A DNA stretch of 64,000 bases, taken from contig JAMWBK010000010.1 in NCBI GenBank assembly GCA_029953675.1, positions 310,001 through 374,000 of the forward strand. The letters are read 5' to 3'. This DNA comes from Rhodosorus marinus CCMP1338. Taxonomy: Eukaryota; Plantae; Rhodophyta. The notes beneath the pieces are model-generated. The model ran no database searches. It saw only the letters and a program-made list of their open reading frames with translations, and was not told the DNA's origin. A program made the translations under genes and the position numbers. Below, piece by piece: positions 17,496 to 24,411 of the stretch. Each line of letters opens with the position of its first letter. The first letter of the stretch is position 1.

Positions 17496-20400
17496 ATGTT
17501 TAAGTGGAGAGATCCTCGGCCCAATGAGGGTTCGCCGAAGGAGATTGCGGAGGGAGCGGATCCGGTGGAACTGCTGGCAATGCTTCACTTTTCGGCGAGT
17601 GCTGGGAGAACGGATGCGGCGAGGGAGGCTCTTAATGTGGGCGCAGATCTGAACGGACTGCTGCAAGTTGAGGTTGGGGGAGTTTTTATGCTTGAGACGG
17701 CTCTACACGCAGCGGCTAAATGTGGTCACGTGGACATTGTCAGACTGCTCTTGTCAGAAGGAGCAGATGCGTCAATCAGGGATTCTGGAGGACTGACGCC
17801 AGTTGAATCTGCTGCTGGACTGTCTGTGACAATGGCGTTTGTGACTGAAATGTGCCAGCGCGCGGCGAAGGGAGACGCTAACGGGGTCGCGCAGATCCTA
17901 AGCGCTGGGCTGGATCCTAACATACCCGACGCAGCTAGTAACACAGGATTGCACTGGGCTTGTGCGTATGGGATGTTCACATCTGCGGACTGCCTCATCA
18001 AGTTCGGGGCGGACGTAAACTCTATTAACTCGAGGGGTGATAGTCCGCTGAACGAAGCAGAAGCACGAAATGCACCGGAGGTTGTCAGATTGTTAATCTC
18101 TGTGGGTGCCTTGAGAGGAGCTGATGTACAAAGAAATAATCCTGGGGACAACCGACCCTCCGTGAATGGAAGGCAGGCCGCTGCCAATGCGCAGGTTCCC
18201 CTCGGGAACCCAGAACTGGCTAGACGTGTTGTAACCCAGGGCGGCGTTCCCGATGTGCAATCACTCGCCGGAGAGCCGGCTACAATCGTTCCACAAGAGC
18301 GAATGGCCAAGCCAGGCATGGATATGAACCCCAGAGGCCATTCACACAACGACCAATCGCAAAAATCTGGAAGACCGCAGAGTGTCCCCCCTCCTTCGAA
18401 TGCTCCCCCATTAGCGACAAACGGCGTCCATGGCCTTAGCAACGCTCAAGTAGCAGCGGAAAACGTGGGAACGCCGAGGGAAGGGCTCATGCCCGGTAGC
18501 TCTCTACTGCAAGGGTTTGCACCGGACGGTCGTCGAAAATTCCAAAGAGAAAACGAACTAATGATGGACACTGGTGGTTATGCTGCCAGGGATGGACATC
18601 TTCAAAGGCCCATGACCGTCCCATCTGCACCCCAGAACTGGACAGGGGAAGGGAATATGCGAGCTTCGAACACCCCCACATTGAGACCGGGAACAGCTGG
18701 CAATTCTGTTATCCCGCTCGAGAACAAAGTAAGGGGGGGCAATGCCTTGGCAGCGAACCACTTTCCCGGAGTCGCACAGCAAGCAAGACAAGGTAGCAGC
18801 ATTCGTGGAGCGGGAGGATCTGGCAGCTCCGTTCCAAGCGCAAACGAGAGGCAGATGTCATATATAGCAGCAAGGACTAGAGAGTTATCTGTAGTTGATC
18901 CCACATTTTGGGACGGCGCACAACAGAAACCAATAGCTCCTCCACCGGATCAAAATGTCTCGACGGGATATAATCCAGACTTAGGCGGCATGCAGTCTCA
19001 AGAGGGACCTGTTGGTTCTCAGTTCCGTTCACCACCCGATATGGTAAGCGCACAAGTGCTCATGGCAGTTCTGAGCGAATCGACAAAGCTTTTATTAACA
19101 TCCTACGTCTATTTTTTGTTACCCTGCTATTTTATTCTATCTTCAGCAGAGTCCGTCAATTCCCTTGCCATTGAAGTTGGACATTGACTCATCAGTTCCA
19201 ACCGCTGGCTCTGGCACACCGAACACCGTGCCCCAAAACGAGACCCCTCTTCTGGCACCGAATAGTGGACAAGCCCAAGTAATTACTCAGCATGTGGGAA
19301 CGCCAATGCCTAAGGATCCGCAGCTGAGAACAGCACCGTCACCCGGTCCCCCGGCAAGTAAGTGCCGTCCGATAAGTCCTAGACGAACCGCTCTATCCAG
19401 GATGTCGAGAGTCTAAACTCTTTCGTCTACAATCTCCACGTGTCCTAGTGATGTTTCGTCAGATGCAACCTGTACCTCAAAATGAAGGCGGATACCTTCG
19501 TCAAGCCCCAGGCTTTGCCCAAGCTGGAGGAGAATTTCACCCGCATTCGCAGGGAGTCCCTTCTGGCCTAATGCCACACGCTCAAATGCAACCAGCACAA
19601 TCGAGGACAGGAGAAAGCGGTCTGGACGGCTTTGACCCGGTAAAGTCGAACGTCGGAGAAGCGCAGCCGGATAATGGTAAGGAAAGTCGGCCTCACAGCC
19701 TATTCGTCGTTGCCAGGACAAAAGAAGCAGAAAAGTTCTTATCGAAAATACTTGCGTGCTATGCTGCAGGGGTCGCTTCTACTACACCGAGTTGGGCGAC
19801 TATGCTCTGGCCGCCGCCCCAAAGGTTCTATATGATGTCCACGGCGAATGAATTTTTCCTGCCACCAGAGCTTACGATATCTGCGAAAAAGTCATTCTTC
19901 TCCATTGCCTCGAAGCTCGCCAGCTGGTTGCAGAGCTGCGACCTGGACCCCAACGTCACAGTCATTGCTCCGCAGCATGGTCGAGGGCTTATCCATCTTT
20001 CGATGAGCAAGGAACTGTTTGGGGGAAGGAGCGAAGCATACAAGCTCACAGTGCACCCCAACGAGGTTAGCATTGTTGGCTCCGACCCTGCCGGTACGTT
20101 TGGAGGCGACCCTAATTTTCGAGTAGCAAGACTGCTTTCAATGCCATTCTGACCCAGTTTTTCTTCCCGCGGTTCAGGTTTGTTTTATGGGTGTTGCACA
20201 TTCGATCAGATCGTCCGGCTGCTTTGTTCTGGAGGTGGTCGAACGTCTCTCCCGTGCTGTTCTGTTACAGATTGGCCTTCCCTTGCACAGCGGAGCGTTA
20301 TGCTTGATATTTCCAGAGGAAAGGTGATGTCAGCTTCGACGCTTCGACAACTCATCCAACGACTGGCAAGGTTGAAATACAATCAGGTACAGCTATACAT

Positions 20401-22056
20401 GGAACACACATTTGGATACCTTGGTCACGAGGAGGTTTGGAGAGACTCTGGAGCAATGAGCCCCGAAGATGTGATGAGTTTGGACGAGTATTGTATAGAT
20501 CTTTTCGTGGAGCTGGTCCCGTTTCAGAGCTCGTTGTCGGGATTCAACAAGTGGGTCAAGAATCCGAAGTATACCCACCTCGCAGAGTGTCCCGATGAGG
20601 TGGACGTCCCAGGACTTGACACTAGCGATCCTCGCGGAAGAATGAGCTTGTGTGCGGTTGACCCTAAGAGCATCGATTTTATTACAGACTTGTACGAGCA
20701 GCTCCTTCCTTGCTTCTCTTCTTCTCAACTTCACGTGGGACTAGATCGCGCACTTGATCTAGGCCGTGGAAGGTCCGCCAAGGAAGTCAGTTCGAAAGGC
20801 GTGGAGACCGTAATTGTCGAGTATTTGAGAAAAATTTGCCACGAAGCGAACAGTCATGGAAAAACTACTGTACATTTCTGGGCTGATGCATTTGGAAGCA
20901 TGCTCGACTACGGGGGTGATCTGAGCGATTTTTCGATGCTCCTACCGGAGGGGGTTATAGCCGTCGAGAGAGGCACCGAACACGACCACCCGTACGATTC
21001 GCGATGCTATCGTCTGTCTTCTATTGGTGTTCCCTTCATGGTGTGTGCTTCCACGTCATCCCAAAATTCGTTTGCCGGAAGGGTATCAAACTGTTTGGAG
21101 AACATTAGGAGCGCAGCGATAGCTGCTGTCAGCAACGCGGCTGTGGGCATGATTATATCGGATTCCGGGGAAAACGGCCACTTGCAGCCGCTTGTCGCGG
21201 CCTATCCTGGGTTTATTGCAGGTGCTGGTGCGGCTTGGAACTGCAACCAGGCGTTGCACAAAACGGATCGCGATATGAGGAAGCTCGCAGCATTGTTGGA
21301 TTCTCATATTTTTATGGATTCAGAGGATACAGCAGCGGTCGGGAGCGTTCTCGTAACTGTTGGGGACCTGCATCTGGTTGCGGAGGACCGCGAACGAGAC
21401 TCGGTCAACTCGACCGCTGCTAGCGTCGTTGGTTATTCCCGACTGTTTCGACTCCTAATTCACGACGGGGATTCTGCATCTTTAGCAGGCCTGTCACCGC
21501 CCGGCATCCAAAGGGCTCTGAATCGCGTTGAGAAGTACGTCAAGCGCAATGTAGTTGTGAAAGCAACAATGGTCTTGGGCCCTCAACTGGTTCTCCACTT
21601 TTCTTGGCTACTGACTAGGGCGCTAGAATTGCTGAACGCCTACCAGGGAATGGCGGGTAGAATTGACGTGGAAGAGGTGCGATTGATGGTGGAAATGCTA
21701 CGGCTTTGTCTGCGGATTGGTACTTGCGTAATCATCAGCAATCGACAAGGGACAGAGGAGTTCGCTCTAAGATGGGTAGGGCAGCACTGGAAGAAATCCT
21801 GGAACGATCGAACCTCTCTAATGTGATCTGTTCTCCTCATCGTGCGAAGCTTGGAGATGGACAAAGATCGGACCTGTGTCTAGGGCTATTGCACTGTATA
21901 GATATGCAGAAGTACATATGGGGTAAGAGAAACCGGCTTGCAGGTTTTGAGGGATCGTGGGCTTGGTTGGAGCCAGCGTTGCTATCTCTTTCGGCAGGAT
22001 TACCGCATCTGGAGCAAACAGTCCAAGAGCGTCGAGAGATTGAGTGGAAATTTTAG
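17496..22056 (+). CDS. Ankyrin repeats + long disordered linker + GH20-fold (hexosaminidase-like) domain with degenerate active site; about 1370 aa spliced
   Basis: ANK motifs (TALHAAAKCGHVDIVRLLLSEGAD, TGLHWACAYG, SPLNEA). GH20 domain-2 motif EAYKLTV..EVSIVGSDPAG-LFYG; catalytic-barrel motifs DWP..RSVMLDISRGKV, NQVQLYMEHTF. Proposed introns 19044-19146/19149, 19358-19448, 20094-20177, 21535-21618 and 21776-21849 give a 4122/4125-nt open frame. Confidence 0.85.
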
Positions 22057-22655
22057 GTTTCCTACGAAAACAGGAAAGTTTTGAATGAGACGAGGAACCA
22101 GGCTTTGGACAGGAATGGAAGTGCCCACTAAGTAATAAATATCCGGAGGCTCACAGACAACAGAAGAAGAAGCCCTATGCTACCAGCAACTATCGTGCGA
22201 AAAGCATATCCCCACCCGCACACTCCCGCTTCCGTGACTCTATTGACCGCCACAAGCTAGGCTAGACACTTCACCAAGATCATGAATTTCGCCGCTATGG
22301 TTCGCCGATTTCCAACCTCTGGGCAGACTGGTGCTATCGATTCGGCTACTTCCAATAAGCACAATCAACTCAGAACCTTGGCGCAGTCGTTTTTCATCAA
22401 TTACGATTGAATTCAATCATTTTGTAGACCGTCGTTGCGGTATGTAGAATTCCGACCCCCTAGTTCGGTATTTGGGAATGCTGTGTGGTAAGGTGAAGGA
22501 GTTGGTTTTGGGATGCATAAGCTGTGAATGTTAGCTTCTGTTGAACGCTGATTTCTGTGGCCTTGAAATCGTTTACAGCCGTGGCTATAGTATGCTTGTG
22601 CATGTCAAGGTCTGTGTTCTTTTGTGTTTGGTTTTGCGTTCTGAGAGGTGAGAAG

Positions 22656-23073
22656 ATGGGTGGGGTGAAGAAGAACCGGGCGAAGCGGCAAAAAATTAAG
22701 GCGTCCAGGATGATTGATGCCATAAAGGCTGACCTGGATGATCCAAAGCGTGCAAAGGAGCTCAGAGATAACCAACCTGTTGACGTGGACCTACCTGGTT
22801 TGGGTCAATTTTACTGCTTGGAGTGTGATAAGTGAGTTTTGCGGTGATGGGGTTGGCAGAGACGGCCCACGGTCTTGTTCCTAACGTTCCCTTGTTTTCT
22901 TTTGCGGTCCTAGGCATTTCATATCTGGTCCAGCGTTGGAGAAACACAAGAGTGGAAAGCCGCATAAGAACCGGCTCCGTAGGTTTCGTGATGAGCCATA
23001 TACAATTGAGGAGAGCGTGATGGCATCTGGCCAAGGTTCAGCGGACCGTGGGATTGGGAAGCGAGCGTCGTGA
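22656..23073 (+). CDS. ZNF593: Zinc finger protein 593 / Bud20 (60S export factor)
   Basis: DVDLPGLGQFYCLECDK|HFISGPALEKHKSGKPHKNRLRRFRDEPYT. Intron 22832-22913 has a CTAAC branch point. Confidence 0.95.
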
Positions 23074-23403: not shown

Positions 23404-24411
23404 TTAGTACAAGTTTCCCTTGATTCTCTGCTCCTCCTTGCGTAACTTGATCTTCTCCTCGGCGTTAGTCAAAAACTTGACAACGGATTCGTACGCAAGG
23501 AACATAAACGCTGCGTTTGGTACTGTCCGAAGCATATGGGCTTCGATACCGGAGTACAACCCTCTCACGCCCTCCTCCATGAAGATAACCCTCAAGCTCT
23601 GTGCCATGCCTATGTATTTGGGTTGCATGCCCTCCGGTACCTTCTCGCGCAAGCGCGTTCGAACAACCTCATGTGGATAGGTCATTAGCGATGCGGTCAT
23701 TTTCGCGCCAGCAGCAGCAGAGAAAACTTGCATGCCCTTGAGTTCGGCCTCTGGATCTATGGCTCGTGCTCGCTCCAACATCTCTGTCTTGACACGCTCA
23801 TATATCAGAAACTGGATGATTGTCTCAGAAACACCCCATATAGATGCGCTTAACCCTTTGTAGAAACCGCCGACTCCCTCATTGTTCCAAATGACTGAGA
23901 TTACTTCACTATAAGAGCGGTATGGATTCGGAGTACCAGCTGCCAACTGGTACCTTGTCTTAATCATCCAGACAGGATTGGTTGCAACCGCAGACCCAAT
24001 CCCTGCGCTCGCTGCGGAAATAATATGAGTCCCGGGAGAATTTCCAAGAACGGGCTCCATTTTGCTCTTCACCGTCGAGTAAGCCCAGAAATATGTTGCT
24101 CGGGTTGGAAAAATTCCAAGGACAGTCGGCAAAAGACCGCGGAAAAATCCAACGGGTCCCTCCTGCACCGCGATCTGCTTTGCGACAATCAAAACTTTGT
24201 AGGAATCCCATACACTCCGCTTGGTAGCATTCTTTCCAGCTTCTGTGCTCGCAACGACAACATTATGCGTCATCGAGCTCTGCAGCTTCGTCTTCAGCAC
24301 CTCCAGCGGACATGTTATTGTTGCAGCAAACGAACCTGCCAGTCCTCCCGCGATGAACGAATACGCTTGCTTGGGCTTTGGTTTTTCCTTCCGGTTGGTA
24401 GCTGTCGCCAT
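23404..24411 (-). CDS. SLC25 mitochondrial carrier, pyrimidine nucleotide carrier type (Rim2/SLC25A33/36-like)
   Basis: Three carrier repeats: ITCPLEVLKTKLQSS, TNPVWMIKTRYQL, TYPHEVVRTRLRE; LRTVPNAAFMF. Single 335-aa ORF. Confidence 0.9.
   Translation of the reverse strand: MATATNRKEKPKPKQAYSFIAGGLAGSFAATITCPLEVLKTKLQSSMTHNVVVASTEAGKNATKRSVWDSYKVLIVAKQIAVQEGPVGFFRGLLPTVLGIFPTRATYFWAYSTVKSKMEPVLGNSPGTHIISAASAGIGSAVATNPVWMIKTRYQLAAGTPNPYRSYSEVISVIWNNEGVGGFYKGLSASIWGVSETIIQFLIYERVKTEMLERARAIDPEAELKGMQVFSAAAGAKMTASLMTYPHEVVRTRLREKVPEGMQPKYIGMAQSLRVIFMEEGVRGLYSGIEAHMLRTVPNAAFMFLAYESVVKFLTNAEEKIKLRKEEQRIKGNLY

What the first reader, a model, noticed from the sequence alone, without database searches (positions are those of the whole stretch)
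17496..22056. Ankyrin-IDR-pseudo-GH20 fusion: a hexosaminidase fold stripped of its catalytic and N-acetyl-pocket residues
GH20 enzymes use an adjacent Asp-Glu pair (H/N-x-G-x-D-E), with Trp/Tyr residues lining the GlcNAc pocket (established). Here the motif is HVGLDR, with Glu replaced by Arg at 20747-20749. Relative to the HexD/bacterial-type consensus as I recall it: NSFGH is SSLSG, WGYE is RGTE, GTSSW is STSSQ, and TDWGD is SDSGE. The barrel scaffold motifs (DISR, NQVQLYMEHTF) and full length are kept. Parallel loss of pocket residues with an intact fold suggests a long-retained pseudoenzyme. With N-terminal ankyrin repeats, a long disordered P/Q/G-rich linker and no signal peptide, it may be a cytosolic scaffold or ligand sensor rather than a glycosidase (inference). 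The GH20 part looks bacterial-type, so an old HGT is possible.
Basis: partly seen in the sequence, partly recalled or inferred. Interest (0 to 1): 0.72.

Follow-up and report, generated by a model that had tools for sequence, protein, structure and literature searches.

The report
Red-alga ankyrin-linked dead hexosaminidase
This Rhodosorus marinus (red alga) gene encodes a 1,343-residue protein that joins ankyrin repeats, through a long flexible linker, to a well-preserved hexosaminidase fold whose catalytic residues are gone; it belongs to an apparently undescribed protein family, shared with choanoflagellates and animals, that has lost catalysis several times.

Summary
The locus is one 7-exon gene (17496-22056, + strand) of the red alga Rhodosorus marinus (KAJ8901618.1). 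It encodes ankyrin repeats, a ~450-aa P/G/A/Q/S-rich linker, and a three-domain GH20 module (GH20b, barrel, helical domain).

- **Fusion:** a full-length MMETSP transcript ORF (P0242, 1356 aa) shows it in a sister strain.
- **Active site:** the catalytic Glu is Arg (codon 20747-20749). It is Glu in 118 of 118 bacterial homologues and R/R/Q/G in red-clade relatives. W373, Y375, W404, W438, D440 and H230 are also replaced.
- **Fold and selection:** the fold is intact (AF2 pLDDT 92; best PDB matches GcnA and GH20C). dN/dS is 0.03-0.07 in the folded domains and 0.39 in the linker.

So this is a long-maintained pseudoenzyme, not a decaying gene.

New here: the fusion is not lineage-specific. Collinear Ank-GH20 proteins occur in choanoflagellates (site intact), corals, molluscs, crustaceans and nematodes (Glu to Leu/Gln). 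A red-alga-specific bacterial transfer is therefore unlikely.

The function is inferred only: probably a non-catalytic, possibly dimeric, binding or scaffold module in the cytosol or nucleus. I found no literature on a GH20 pseudoenzyme or an Ank-GH20 family.

The parts
17496..19043 (+). Exon 1 (start ATG; ankyrin module and most of the linker)
   Evidence: ORF and GT donor. The junction is confirmed by transcript contigs L003-L005 of a sister strain.
19147..19357 (+). Exon 2 (linker). It has a tandem CAGCAG acceptor, so the exon can also start at 19150.
   Evidence: L003-L005 use 19147. P0242 and the deposited model lack Q517.
19449..19676 (+). Exon 3 (end of the linker)
   Evidence: The intron 19677-19769 (93 nt, in frame, no stop) is revealed only by the transcripts and by P0121.
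19770..20093 (+). Exon 4 (GH20b domain, starts near ...WATMLWPPPQ)
   Evidence: PF02838, 45.6 bits, cut-off 26.1.
20094..20177 (+). Intron 4 (84 nt, contains an in-frame stop). It is retained in three transcript contigs of the sister strain and spliced in the MMETSP ORFs.
   Evidence: AG|LFYG is contiguous in bacterial homologues and in P0001.
20178..21534 (+). Exon 5 (end of GH20b, the whole (beta/alpha)8 barrel, start of the helical domain)
21619..21775 (+). Exon 6 (helical domain)
   Evidence: Spliced in L005. The junction matches P0001. The intron position is shared with L002.
21850..22056 (+). Exon 7 (helical domain, clade-specific tail, stop codon)
   Evidence: Spliced in L004 and L005. 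The intron position is shared with L002.
17583..18140 (+). Ankyrin module (aa ~30-215), with an N-terminal GRTD helix and an LHWA repeat
   Evidence: Pfam Ank_2 E 7e-21. It is collinear with the Ank modules of choanoflagellate, coral and arthropod Ank-GH20 proteins. omega 0.065.
18141..19675 (+). Linker (aa 216-662, crosses introns 1-2): low-complexity, P/G/A/Q/S-rich, probably disordered
   Evidence: Composition. omega 0.39 against <=0.07 in the folded domains. No predicted secondary structure at 232-694, but the model is low-confidence throughout.
20246..21262 (+). GH20 (beta/alpha)8 barrel (aa ~794-1132)
   Evidence: AF2 pLDDT 92, eight strands. Foldseek hits to GcnA and GH20C. PF00728 24.5 bits, cut-off 22.3.
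20522..20542 (+). FQSSLSG: replaces NQNSFGH after strand 3 (N, N, G and the invariant His lost)
20732..20749 (+). HVGLDR: the catalytic pair position after strand 4. Asp960 is kept. Glu is replaced by Arg961 (CGC, 20747-20749).
20966..20980 (+). ERGTE: replaces EWGYE after strand 6 (stacking Trp to Arg; acetamido-binding Tyr to Thr)
   Evidence: Residue roles are taken by motif spacing from GH20C Trp306/Tyr308.
21050..21064 (+). STSSQ: replaces GTSSW after strand 7
21158..21181 (+). SDSGENGH: replaces TDWGDNGH after strand 8 (Trp to Ser, Asp to Glu)
   Evidence: Residue roles are taken by motif spacing from GH20C Trp373/Asp375.
21266..22053 (+). C-terminal alpha-helical domain III (aa ~1134-1343, crosses introns 5-6); contains KRNRLAGF (RNRPGG in bacteria)
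   Evidence: It has the lowest omega in the gene (0.025).
21997..22053 (+). Clade-specific C-terminal tail GLPHLEQTVQERREIEWKF. It is conserved in the red clade and absent from the bacterial and choanoflagellate proteins inspected.

Best explanation
The locus is a single nuclear gene of Rhodosorus marinus. It encodes a 1,343-aa protein with no signal peptide, so it is presumably cytosolic or nuclear.

Domain order: ankyrin module, then a ~450-aa low-complexity linker, then a GH20b domain, a (beta/alpha)8 GH20 barrel and an alpha-helical domain III.

Shown: the GH20 module is a catalytically dead homologue of three-domain bacterial-type beta-N-acetylhexosaminidases.
- The acid/base Glu is Arg.
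- The residues that stack on and hydrogen-bond the HexNAc in subsite -1 are replaced (W373R, Y375T, W404Q, W438S, D440E, H230G).
- The barrel, GH20b and domain III remain intact and strongly constrained.
- It belongs to an old eukaryotic Ank-GH20 family. Choanoflagellate members keep an intact active site, while the animal and red-clade members have lost it in different ways.

Inferred mechanism: the protein acts by binding, not by hydrolysis.
- The ankyrin module recruits protein partners.
- The flexible linker gives it reach.
- The rigid GH20 module serves as an interaction platform. It probably dimerises through domain III, as GcnA does.
- The conserved clade-specific C-terminal tail possibly occupies the remodelled former pocket.
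For: **Gene model and fusion**
- Seven GT-AG exons.
- Transcript contigs L003-L005 of a sister strain span Ank to GH20 on one molecule.
- The fully spliced MMETSP ORF P0242 (1356 aa) is collinear with my model.

**Host and context**
- P0249 is 100% identical over the stretches it shares with the GH20 region of my model, and equals KAJ8901618.1 of Rhodosorus marinus on a 1.69-Mb contig.
- The neighbouring genes are ordinary eukaryotic genes.
- Three intron positions are shared with a 65%-identical relative.

**Dead active site**
- Glu is Arg, against 118/118 Glu in bacterial homologues. Six further invariant pocket residues are replaced.
- Of 150 aligned sequences (146 cluster representatives plus the query, P0001, P0002 and P0242), 141 keep Glu.
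- The Arg aligns on the catalytic Glu of solved GH20s.
- All the replacements sit at the C-terminal ends of barrel strands 3, 4, 6, 7 and 8.
- Residue roles come from GH20C.

**Intact fold**
- AF2 pLDDT 92, pTM 0.94.
- Foldseek: GcnA 2epl and GH20C 5a6b, E ~1e-23, TM 0.69/0.76.

**Selection**
- Against the sister strain (dS ~0.3), omega is 0.065 for Ank, 0.035 for GH20b, 0.069 for the barrel, 0.025 for domain III and 0.39 for the linker.
- 61 of 88 columns that are highly conserved in bacteria are kept in all three red-clade proteins.

**Family**
- The Ank-GH20b-GH20 architecture occurs in Salpingoeca, Monosiga, Diaphanoeca, corals, a bivalve, crustaceans and nematodes.
- Their Ank modules are the best collinear matches to the window's Ank module.

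**Dimer precedent**
- Domain III of GcnA forms much of the dimer interface, and the partner's C-terminus reaches subsite -1 (PMC4449183).
Against: - No biochemical test exists. Inactivity is inferred from residues.
- There is no transcript from this strain itself. The evidence comes from a sister strain that is 85-92% identical in DNA.
- The three JGI contigs all retain intron 4, which would truncate the product after GH20b. The abundance of the full-length form is therefore unknown.
- The replaced pocket positions are not more conserved than the background (8/17 against 58%). That argues neither for nor against a new ligand site.
- The dimer and the tail-in-pocket ideas rest on analogy with GcnA. 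I had no model coordinates, and the last ~10 residues have pLDDT 35.
- Disorder of the linker is supported only by composition, relaxed selection and a low-confidence model.
Confidence: 0.8

Rival explanations
1. The remodelled pocket is a new small-ligand sensor, for example for an anionic sugar, phosphosugar or nucleotide sugar. The two new arginines (R961, R1035) would bind the ligand, and occupancy would be signalled through the ankyrin module.
For: - Two Arg replace the Glu and a Trp in the former pocket. W373R is identical in all three orthologues and arose again in Diaphanoeca grandis.
- R155, D298, W343 and D345 of the sugar site are kept.
Against: - Half of the replaced positions drift among orthologues: 299 R/R/Q, 375 T/A/D, 404 Q/H/H, 438 S/V/Y, 440 E/T/Y.
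- Their conservation is not above background.
- The arginines could simply form salt bridges with D298, E184 or D345 and fill the pocket.
Confidence: 0.2
2. The protein is still a glycosidase, or another enzyme, that uses a different acid/base residue or acts on a different substrate.
For: - The Asp of the D-E pair, the DxSR Arg and W343 are kept.
- The strong constraint on the barrel (omega 0.069) would also fit an enzyme.
Against: - The acid/base Glu is invariant in 118/118 close bacterial homologues and in all solved GH20s that were aligned. Here it is a cationic Arg, and Gln or Gly in relatives.
- The aromatic cage and the acetamido-binding Tyr are gone too.
- No conserved alternative carboxylate appears among the replaced positions.
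Confidence: 0.07
3. The GH20 part was acquired by red algae directly from bacteria and was fused to ankyrin repeats independently of the choanoflagellate and animal proteins.
For: - The GH20 region is as similar to bacterial proteins (35-43% identity) as to holozoan Ank-GH20 proteins (about 34%).
- The known distribution among eukaryotes is patchy.
Against: - The Ank modules are collinear and are the best mutual matches among ~520 retrieved proteins. They share the GRTD helix and the LHWA repeat.
- In the NJ tree the bacteria form one clan (71%; with P0251, 94.5%) and do not interleave with the other eukaryotes.
- The spliceosomal intron positions are conserved within the red clade.
Confidence: 0.1
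4. It is an artefact: two adjacent genes wrongly joined, or a decaying or unexpressed pseudogene.
For: - The three JGI contigs retain intron 4, which has an in-frame stop.
- The deposited model differs from mine by 32 residues.
Against: - A full-length spliced ORF exists in MMETSP (P0242).
- The same architecture occurs in many eukaryotes.
- omega is 0.03-0.07 in the folded domains.
- The spliced frame has no internal stops or frameshifts.
Confidence: 0.03

Closest known systems
Streptococcus gordonii GcnA (PDB 2epk/2epl) and S. pneumoniae GH20C (5a6b): three-domain GH20 beta-N-acetylhexosaminidases
   Same: They are the best full-length structural matches (Foldseek E ~1e-23, TM 0.69/0.76). 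The order is the same: GH20b, (beta/alpha)8 barrel, alpha-helical domain III. The active-site motif spacing is the same: D-E, W..., WxY, W, WxD.
   Different: Sequence identity is only ~15%. Both are active enzymes with an intact Asp-Glu pair and aromatic cage. They have no ankyrin module or linker. The window protein has Arg for Glu and has lost five of the cage and hydrogen-bonding residues.
Bacterial 'family 20 glycosylhydrolase' proteins of ~620-640 aa (Acidobacteriota, Methylomirabilales, Thermoanaerobaculia, Planctomycetota MAGs; e.g. P0003, P0006, P0020)
   Same: They are the closest non-ankyrin sequence relatives (35-43% identity over the whole GH20 module, E 1e-98 to 1e-110). They share the three domains and motifs such as DISR, NQxQLYMEHTF, GRS and RNRxGG.
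   Different: All 118 that I examined keep the catalytic Glu and the pocket residues. They have no Ank module, no linker, no introns and no conserved C-terminal tail.
Choanoflagellate Ank-GH20 proteins (Salpingoeca rosetta PTSG_02041, Monosiga brevicollis MONBRDRAFT_28983, S. kvevrii P0256)
   Same: They have the same Ank-GH20b-barrel-domain III architecture, with a collinear ankyrin module.
   Different: Their active site is fully intact. The linker is only ~60-150 aa. The red-clade C-terminal tail is missing.
Animal Ank-GH20-like proteins (Stylophora pistillata PFX32766.1 'Tankyrase-1', Pocillopora, Mya arenaria LOC128209056, Oratosquilla, Loa loa LOAG_05646)
   Same: They have the same architecture and have also lost the catalytic Glu. 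They are uncharacterised.
   Different: The loss looks independent: Glu is Leu or Gln, and in bilaterians Asp is Asn. G400, W404 and, outside the nematodes, W438 are kept where the red clade lost them. In bilaterians the barrel is so diverged that Pfam no longer detects it.
Glycosidase-derived pseudoenzymes in general, such as Klotho/beta-Klotho (GH1) and chitinase-like lectins (GH18). From my own knowledge; Klotho as a 'pseudoglycosidase' also appears in the hits.
   Same: A TIM-barrel glycosidase fold is kept under selection after the acid/base Glu was lost, and it is reused for binding.
   Different: They belong to different GH families, are extracellular or membrane proteins, and have known ligands. 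No GH20 example turned up in my literature searches.

Membership tests
CAZy GH20 beta-N-acetylhexosaminidase (as a functional enzyme) | Sequence and fold homology: GH20b domain plus (beta/alpha)8 GH20 catalytic domain | tested here: met
   PF02838 45.6 bits (cut-off 26.1) and PF00728 24.5 bits (cut-off 22.3) on the spliced protein. E 1e-98 to 1e-110 to bacterial GH20s. AF2 model plus Foldseek hits to solved GH20s.
CAZy GH20 beta-N-acetylhexosaminidase (as a functional enzyme) | Adjacent catalytic Asp-Glu pair after strand 4 (substrate-assisted mechanism) | tested here: not met
   The pair is Asp-Arg (HVGLDR, 20732-20749). It aligns on GGDE of SpHex and on the DE of other solved GH20s. Glu is present in 118/118 bacterial homologues.
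CAZy GH20 beta-N-acetylhexosaminidase (as a functional enzyme) | Subsite -1 aromatic cage, acetamido-binding Tyr and O4/O6-binding carboxylate | tested here: not met
   W373R, Y375T, W404Q, W438S, D440E and H230G are replaced; only R155, D298, W343 and D345 are kept. Residue roles were assigned by motif spacing to GH20C residues, not by superposition.
CAZy GH20 beta-N-acetylhexosaminidase (as a functional enzyme) | Hydrolysis of terminal beta-HexNAc | not testable with these tools
   This needs an enzyme assay.
Three-domain GcnA/GH20C-type GH20 | GH20b, barrel and C-terminal alpha-helical domain III in one chain | tested here: met
   DSSP of the AF2 model: alpha/beta 1-125, eight-stranded barrel 132-470, helices 472-676. 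The best Foldseek hits cover ~650 columns of GcnA and GH20C.
Three-domain GcnA/GH20C-type GH20 | Homodimer through domain III, with the partner's C-terminus reaching the active site | not testable with these tools
   Only a monomer was modelled and no coordinates were available. The precedent comes from PMC4449183.
Eukaryotic Ank-GH20 family (no published description found) | N-terminal ankyrin module collinear with that of other members (GRTD helix, two-plus-three repeat layout, LHWA repeat) | tested here: met
   Leaving aside the window's own protein and its sister-strain orthologues, all but one (P0219, rank 25) of the top 25 single-HSP blastp hits are family members, ahead of tankyrases and ankyrins. 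The multiple alignment agrees.
Eukaryotic Ank-GH20 family (no published description found) | The GH20 module groups with eukaryotic members and is not nested in a bacterial subgroup | tested here: inconclusive
   NJ tree, 624 columns, 200 bootstraps: bacteria form one clan at 71%, bacteria plus P0251 at 94.5%, the red clade at 98%. The distance method is crude, long branches are present and the bacterial sample is limited.
Pseudoenzyme | Homologue of an enzyme family that lacks essential catalytic residues | tested here: met
Pseudoenzyme | Maintained by purifying selection and expressed | tested here: met
   omega is 0.03-0.07 in the folded domains. Transcripts exist in a sister strain. Expression in this strain was not tested.
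   No HEXD sequence was compared. The only indirect link is that GH20C is the closest solved structure both to this model and to the subfamily 1 enzyme HEX-2.

The most novel reading that the evidence does not exclude
Ank-GH20 is an ancient nucleocytoplasmic eukaryotic family. It began as a HexNAc-removing enzyme, which is the state kept in most choanoflagellates. It was then converted independently, in animals, in the red clade and in at least one choanoflagellate, into a non-catalytic 'reader' or scaffold. If so, its conserved cellular role is binding, possibly of HexNAc-modified or anionic ligands, rather than hydrolysis.
Probability: 0.25. Interest if true: 0.8.

Novelty: new variant of a known kind. 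Interest (0 to 1): 0.58.

Why it matters
Pseudoenzymes derived from glycosidases are known for GH1 and GH18. My literature searches found no GH20 pseudoenzyme and no description of an ankyrin-GH20 family.

- **Annotation:** databases auto-name this protein and its relatives 'beta-N-acetylhexosaminidase' or 'Tankyrase-1'. For the red-alga and animal members that is very probably wrong as a statement of function.
- **A natural experiment:** the family contains intact-site members (choanoflagellates), a partly decayed one (P0250, where Glu is lost but most of the pocket is kept) and fully remodelled ones. It can therefore show how a substrate-assisted glycosidase is turned into a binding module, and what a cytosolic ankyrin-tethered hexosaminidase does in the first place.
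- **Gene transfer:** 'bacterial-type' similarity alone would have suggested a simple bacterial transfer into red algae. The shared ankyrin module argues against that.

Tried and rejected
1. **First gene model.** My first 5-6 exon model kept an in-frame, stop-free intron (19677-19769) as coding sequence. The sister-strain transcripts corrected it.
2. **Pfam on raw ORF pieces.** This gave only marginal GH20 hits. The spliced protein passes both gathering thresholds.
3. **Two-gene reading.** I considered separate Ank-IDR and GH20 genes, because P0121 ends after GH20b. I rejected this: P0121 is an intron-retention product, and the full-length P0242 exists.
4. **Recent private mutation or pseudogene.** Rejected on the orthologue states and on dN/dS.
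5. **Red-alga-specific bacterial HGT.** Made unlikely by the shared Ank module and by the tree. The direction and age of any bacterium-eukaryote transfer remain unresolved.
6. **PDB profile search for pocket mapping.** It aligned mostly the N-terminal half. Residue roles therefore rest on motif spacing against the published GH20C residues.
7. **AF2 of the N-terminal 771 aa.** With a two-sequence alignment the model was low-confidence everywhere (mean pLDDT 33.7), so it is only weak support for disorder.
8. **Pocket geometry and electrostatics.** These could not be computed, because the session exposes no model coordinates.
9. **Tandem repeats.** None in the locus.
10. **Literature.** Searches for a GH20 pseudoenzyme, for ankyrin plus GH20, and for the locus tags found nothing relevant.
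11. **Taxon of relatives.** The taxon of P0001, P0002/L001-L002, P0250 and P0391 could not be determined. 'Red clade' is named only after its Rhodosorus members.

Full report
**Anatomy**

The region 17496-22056 holds one gene on the + strand. Raw ORFs are interrupted. Canonical GT-AG introns join them.

Transcript contigs from a close relative refined the model to seven exons (JGI sample 3300017118, L003-L005, 85-92% DNA identity):
- 17496-19043
- 19147-19357
- 19449-19676
- 19770-20093
- 20178-21534
- 21619-21775
- 21850-22056

The CDS is 4,032 nt and encodes 1,343 aa. The 93-nt intron 19677-19769 is in frame and has no stop, so it is invisible without transcripts. The last two introns are also supported by colinearity with the transcript-derived protein P0001. 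A 65%-identical genomic relative, L002, is interrupted at the same positions.

**Identity of the organism and of the gene**

An exhaustive HMMER search returned P0249, which is 100% identical over the stretches it shares with the GH20 region of my model. It is KAJ8901618.1, 'hypothetical protein NDN08_003826' of Rhodosorus marinus. UniRef names it 'Beta-N-acetylhexosaminidase'. It lies on a 1.69-Mb contig.

That fits the chromosome-level assembly of R. marinus CCMP1338 (PMC10250338). The neighbouring mitochondrial-carrier gene clusters at 90% identity or more with an R. marinus MMETSP protein. The other neighbours are ordinary eukaryotic genes: a tubulin-family fragment, NT-C2 and a class 3 lipase.

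The deposited 1,311-aa model differs from mine in two places:
- It skips 31 conserved residues (GLFYGCCTFDQIVRLLCSGGGRTSLPCCSVT), which the MMETSP ORF includes.
- It uses the downstream AG of a CAGCAG tandem acceptor.

**Is the fusion real?**

Yes.
- All three transcript contigs carry Ank, linker and GH20 on one molecule, with introns 1-3 spliced.
- The 90% cluster of P0121 contains P0242. This is a fully spliced 1,356-aa MMETSP ORF (UniRef A0A7S2ZDM0) that is collinear with my model from the start Met to the final ...EIEWKF.
- The JGI contigs all retain intron 4 (20094-20177), which has an in-frame stop. That yields the 794-aa product P0121.
- Intron 4 is nevertheless spliced in P0242, P0243 and P0001. 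The junction AG|LFYG is contiguous in bacterial homologues.

**Domains**

- Pfam finds ankyrin repeats at aa 67-213 (Ank_2, E 7e-21).
- On the spliced GH20 region, Glyco_hydro_20b scores 45.6 bits and Glyco_hydro_20 scores 24.5 bits. Both are above their gathering cut-offs.
- AlphaFold2 with a 121-sequence alignment gives pLDDT 92 and pTM 0.94 for aa 663-1343. The model has an alpha/beta GH20b domain, an eight-stranded barrel and a helical domain III.
- Foldseek against PDB ranks S. gordonii GcnA and S. pneumoniae GH20C first (E ~1e-23, TM 0.69/0.76 over ~650 columns). These are three-domain GH20 enzymes.
- The linker (aa 216-662) is P/G/A/Q/S-rich and evolves about six times faster than the folded parts. 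It has no predicted secondary structure, but that model is low-confidence throughout. Disorder is therefore likely, not shown.
- No N-terminal hydrophobic segment exists.

**The active site**

phmmer against PDB aligns LHVGLDRA with LHIGGDEA of SpHex. A family profile aligns vGlDEt with VGGDEC, IGADEV and LGGDEC of BT0459, Nag2 and Bt4394. Arg961 (CGC, 20747-20749) therefore replaces the acid/base Glu.

Conservation across the 118 bacterial homologues, in numbering of the GH20 region:

| Residue | Bacterial homologues that keep it |
|---|---|
| Glu299 | 118/118 |
| H230 | 118/118 |
| W373 | 118/118 |
| W438 | 118/118 |
| D440 | 118/118 |
| G229 | 118/118 |
| W404 | 117/118 |
| G400 | 117/118 |
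| Y375 | 116/118 |

In the window protein these positions read R, G, R, S, E, S, Q, S and T.

D152, R155 (DISR), E184, D298, W343, D345 and W462 are retained.

In the model, every replaced residue follows strand 3, 4, 6, 7 or 8 at the catalytic face of the barrel. The retained ones follow strands 1, 2 and 5.

I assigned roles by motif spacing to the published GH20C residues Arg94, Asp222-Glu223, Trp266, Trp306/Tyr308, Trp339 and Trp373/Asp375 (PMC11308363). On that basis the protein has lost:
- the acid/base residue
- two stacking Trp
- the Tyr that binds the acetamido group
- the Trp near C6
- the exact carboxylate that binds O4/O6

This mapping is inferred, not superposed.

**Retention**

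The sister-strain orthologue has identical motifs. P0001 (68% identity) has R at the Glu position and P0002 (65%) has Q. Both share S226, L228, S229, G230, R373 and S400 with the window protein, but they vary at 224, 375, 404, 438 and 440.

Nei-Gojobori estimates against the sister strain, with dS ~0.3:

| Region | omega |
|---|---|
| Ank | 0.065 |
| Linker | 0.39 |
| GH20b | 0.035 |
| Barrel | 0.069 |
| Domain III | 0.025 |

Of 88 columns that are at least 95% conserved in bacteria, 61 are kept in all three red-clade proteins and 17 are replaced in all three. Eight of those 17 are identical among the three, against 58% identity for all columns. So the scaffold is conserved, but the old pocket is not specially conserved.

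Two further relatives join this clade with 97% NJ bootstrap support:
- P0250 has Glu replaced by Gly and W404 by His, but keeps WGYE and TDWGDNGH.
- P0391 carries an Ank module and a more degraded barrel.

Loss therefore began with the Glu and proceeded stepwise.

**A wider family**

Among 150 aligned sequences (146 cluster representatives at 50% identity plus the query, P0001, P0002 and P0242), 141 keep Glu. Several of the longer representatives turned out to be Ank-GH20b-GH20 proteins, and their sources are eukaryotes:
- Choanoflagellates: Salpingoeca kvevrii, S. rosetta (PTSG_02041), Monosiga brevicollis, Barroeca monosierra, Diaphanoeca grandis.
- Corals: Pocillopora and Stylophora (there annotated 'Tankyrase-1').
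- Other animals: the bivalve Mya arenaria, the crustaceans Oratosquilla and Panulirus, and several nematodes.

Active-site states in this family:
- Most choanoflagellates, P0251 and P0411 keep every active-site residue.
- D. grandis is degenerate (D298G, and W373R as in the red clade).
- The coral has HVGLDL.
- Bilaterians have HxGPNL.
- Pfam no longer recognises the barrel in bilaterians.

The window's ankyrin module finds these proteins, at collinear N-terminal positions, as its best single-HSP matches among ~520 retrieved proteins. That set includes the best generic ankyrin hits from the 5.8-billion-sequence database. A multiple alignment shows the shared GRTD helix, repeat layout and LHWA motif. 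The fusion therefore predates the red-clade lineage.

What is special in Rhodosorus is the ~450-aa linker, against roughly 60-150 aa elsewhere (read from the sequences). The particular pocket substitutions are also special. So is a conserved C-terminal tail, G(L/I)PxLE...RRxx(E/D)W(K/R)(F/L), which the bacterial and choanoflagellate proteins I inspected lack.

**Origin**

An NJ tree (624 columns, 57 taxa, 200 bootstraps) gave these supports:

| Grouping | Bootstrap |
|---|---|
| Sampled bacteria as one clan | 71% |
| Bacteria plus eukaryotic P0251 | 94.5% |
| Red clade | 98% |
| Choanoflagellates | 98% |
| Animals | 98% |

A split that groups the red clade with animals has 82% support. It may be a long-branch or 'dead-site' artefact.

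With the shared Ank module, this favours one origin of the eukaryotic family. It argues against a separate bacterial transfer into red algae. It cannot tell whether bacteria donated to an early eukaryote, whether the reverse happened, or whether the patchy distribution reflects losses or eukaryote-to-eukaryote transfer.

**Mechanism**

Shown:
- The module cannot use the canonical GH20 substrate-assisted mechanism.
- It is nevertheless conserved as a folded unit, together with the ankyrin module.

Inferred:
- The protein works by binding.
- GcnA dimerises largely through domain III, and its partner's C-terminus reaches subsite -1 next to the conserved Arg (PMC4449183).
- Here domain III is the most constrained part of the gene and carries a clade-specific conserved tail. 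A domain III dimer whose tail, or whose new arginines, fill the former pocket is a reasonable but untested model.
- The alternative is that the remodelled, more cationic pocket senses an anionic ligand. Nothing excludes it, but no extra conservation supports it either.

**Comparison and novelty**

The closest solved relatives are GcnA and GH20C. The closest sequences are uncharacterised bacterial three-domain GH20s and the eukaryotic Ank-GH20 proteins. In concept it resembles other glycosidase-derived pseudoenzymes (Klotho, chitinase-like lectins; my own knowledge).

Full-text searches found no GH20 pseudoenzyme, no ankyrin-GH20 family and no mention of the locus tags. I rate it a new variant of a known kind. 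It is of moderate to good interest, mainly because of the family-wide, repeated loss of catalysis across animals and red algae.

Noticed in passing
window 20094-20177: Intron 4 (84 nt, in-frame stop) is retained in all three JGI transcript contigs of the sister strain (L003-L005). That gives a truncated 794-aa Ank-linker-GH20b product (P0121). The intron is spliced in the MMETSP ORFs. This may be regulated intron retention, or merely unspliced RNA in the assembly.
   Followed up: partly
window 19145-19150: The acceptor of intron 1 is a tandem CAGCAG. Both forms occur in transcripts of the sister strain: with Gln517 in L003-L005, and without it in P0242 and in the deposited model.
   Followed up: partly
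window 20094-20270: The deposited GenBank model (KAJ8901618.1, 1311 aa) uses a longer intron. It omits 31 conserved residues (aa 771-801, GLFYGCC...CCSVT) at the GH20b-barrel junction. The MMETSP ORF and all homologues include them.
   Followed up: yes
L002 25-1320 (Logan SRR22824282; also L001): In a 65%-identical relative, the region upstream of GH20b holds a different low-complexity linker. It contains a short segment that looks folded (LMLATYVRSQNKPVTEEELCEEIKNMYKDLRKPDG...). The segment has only a weak hit to DUF7648 (E 2.5e-4, below the cut-off) and looks HARE-HTH-like by eye. The contig ends before any ankyrin module could be seen.
   Followed up: partly
window 21997-22053: A conserved C-terminal tail (GLPHLEQTVQERREIEWKF; GMDWKL and EHEWRF endings in relatives) occurs only in the red clade. 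In GcnA the partner's C-terminus inserts into subsite -1, so the tail might occupy the dead pocket.
   Followed up: partly
P0297 (Diaphanoeca grandis), compared with window 20966-20980: The choanoflagellate D. grandis independently shows the same W373-to-Arg change (CERGCE) and D440-to-Glu change as Rhodosorus, together with D298-to-Gly. This looks like convergent remodelling of the same pocket positions.
   Followed up: no
P0509, P0513, P0514 (nematode relatives): Several nematode Ank-GH20-like proteins are annotated as eIF3k, or are fused to it (PF10075). This probably reflects neighbouring genes merged by gene prediction.
   Followed up: no
window 22557-22835 and 23404-24411: Two downstream neighbours. 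On the + strand, a short ORF ending ...GQFYCLECDK looks like the first exon of a ZNF593/Bud20-type zinc-finger protein, but it has no Pfam hit. On the - strand lies a single-exon mitochondrial carrier (Mito_carr, E 1e-61).
   Followed up: partly
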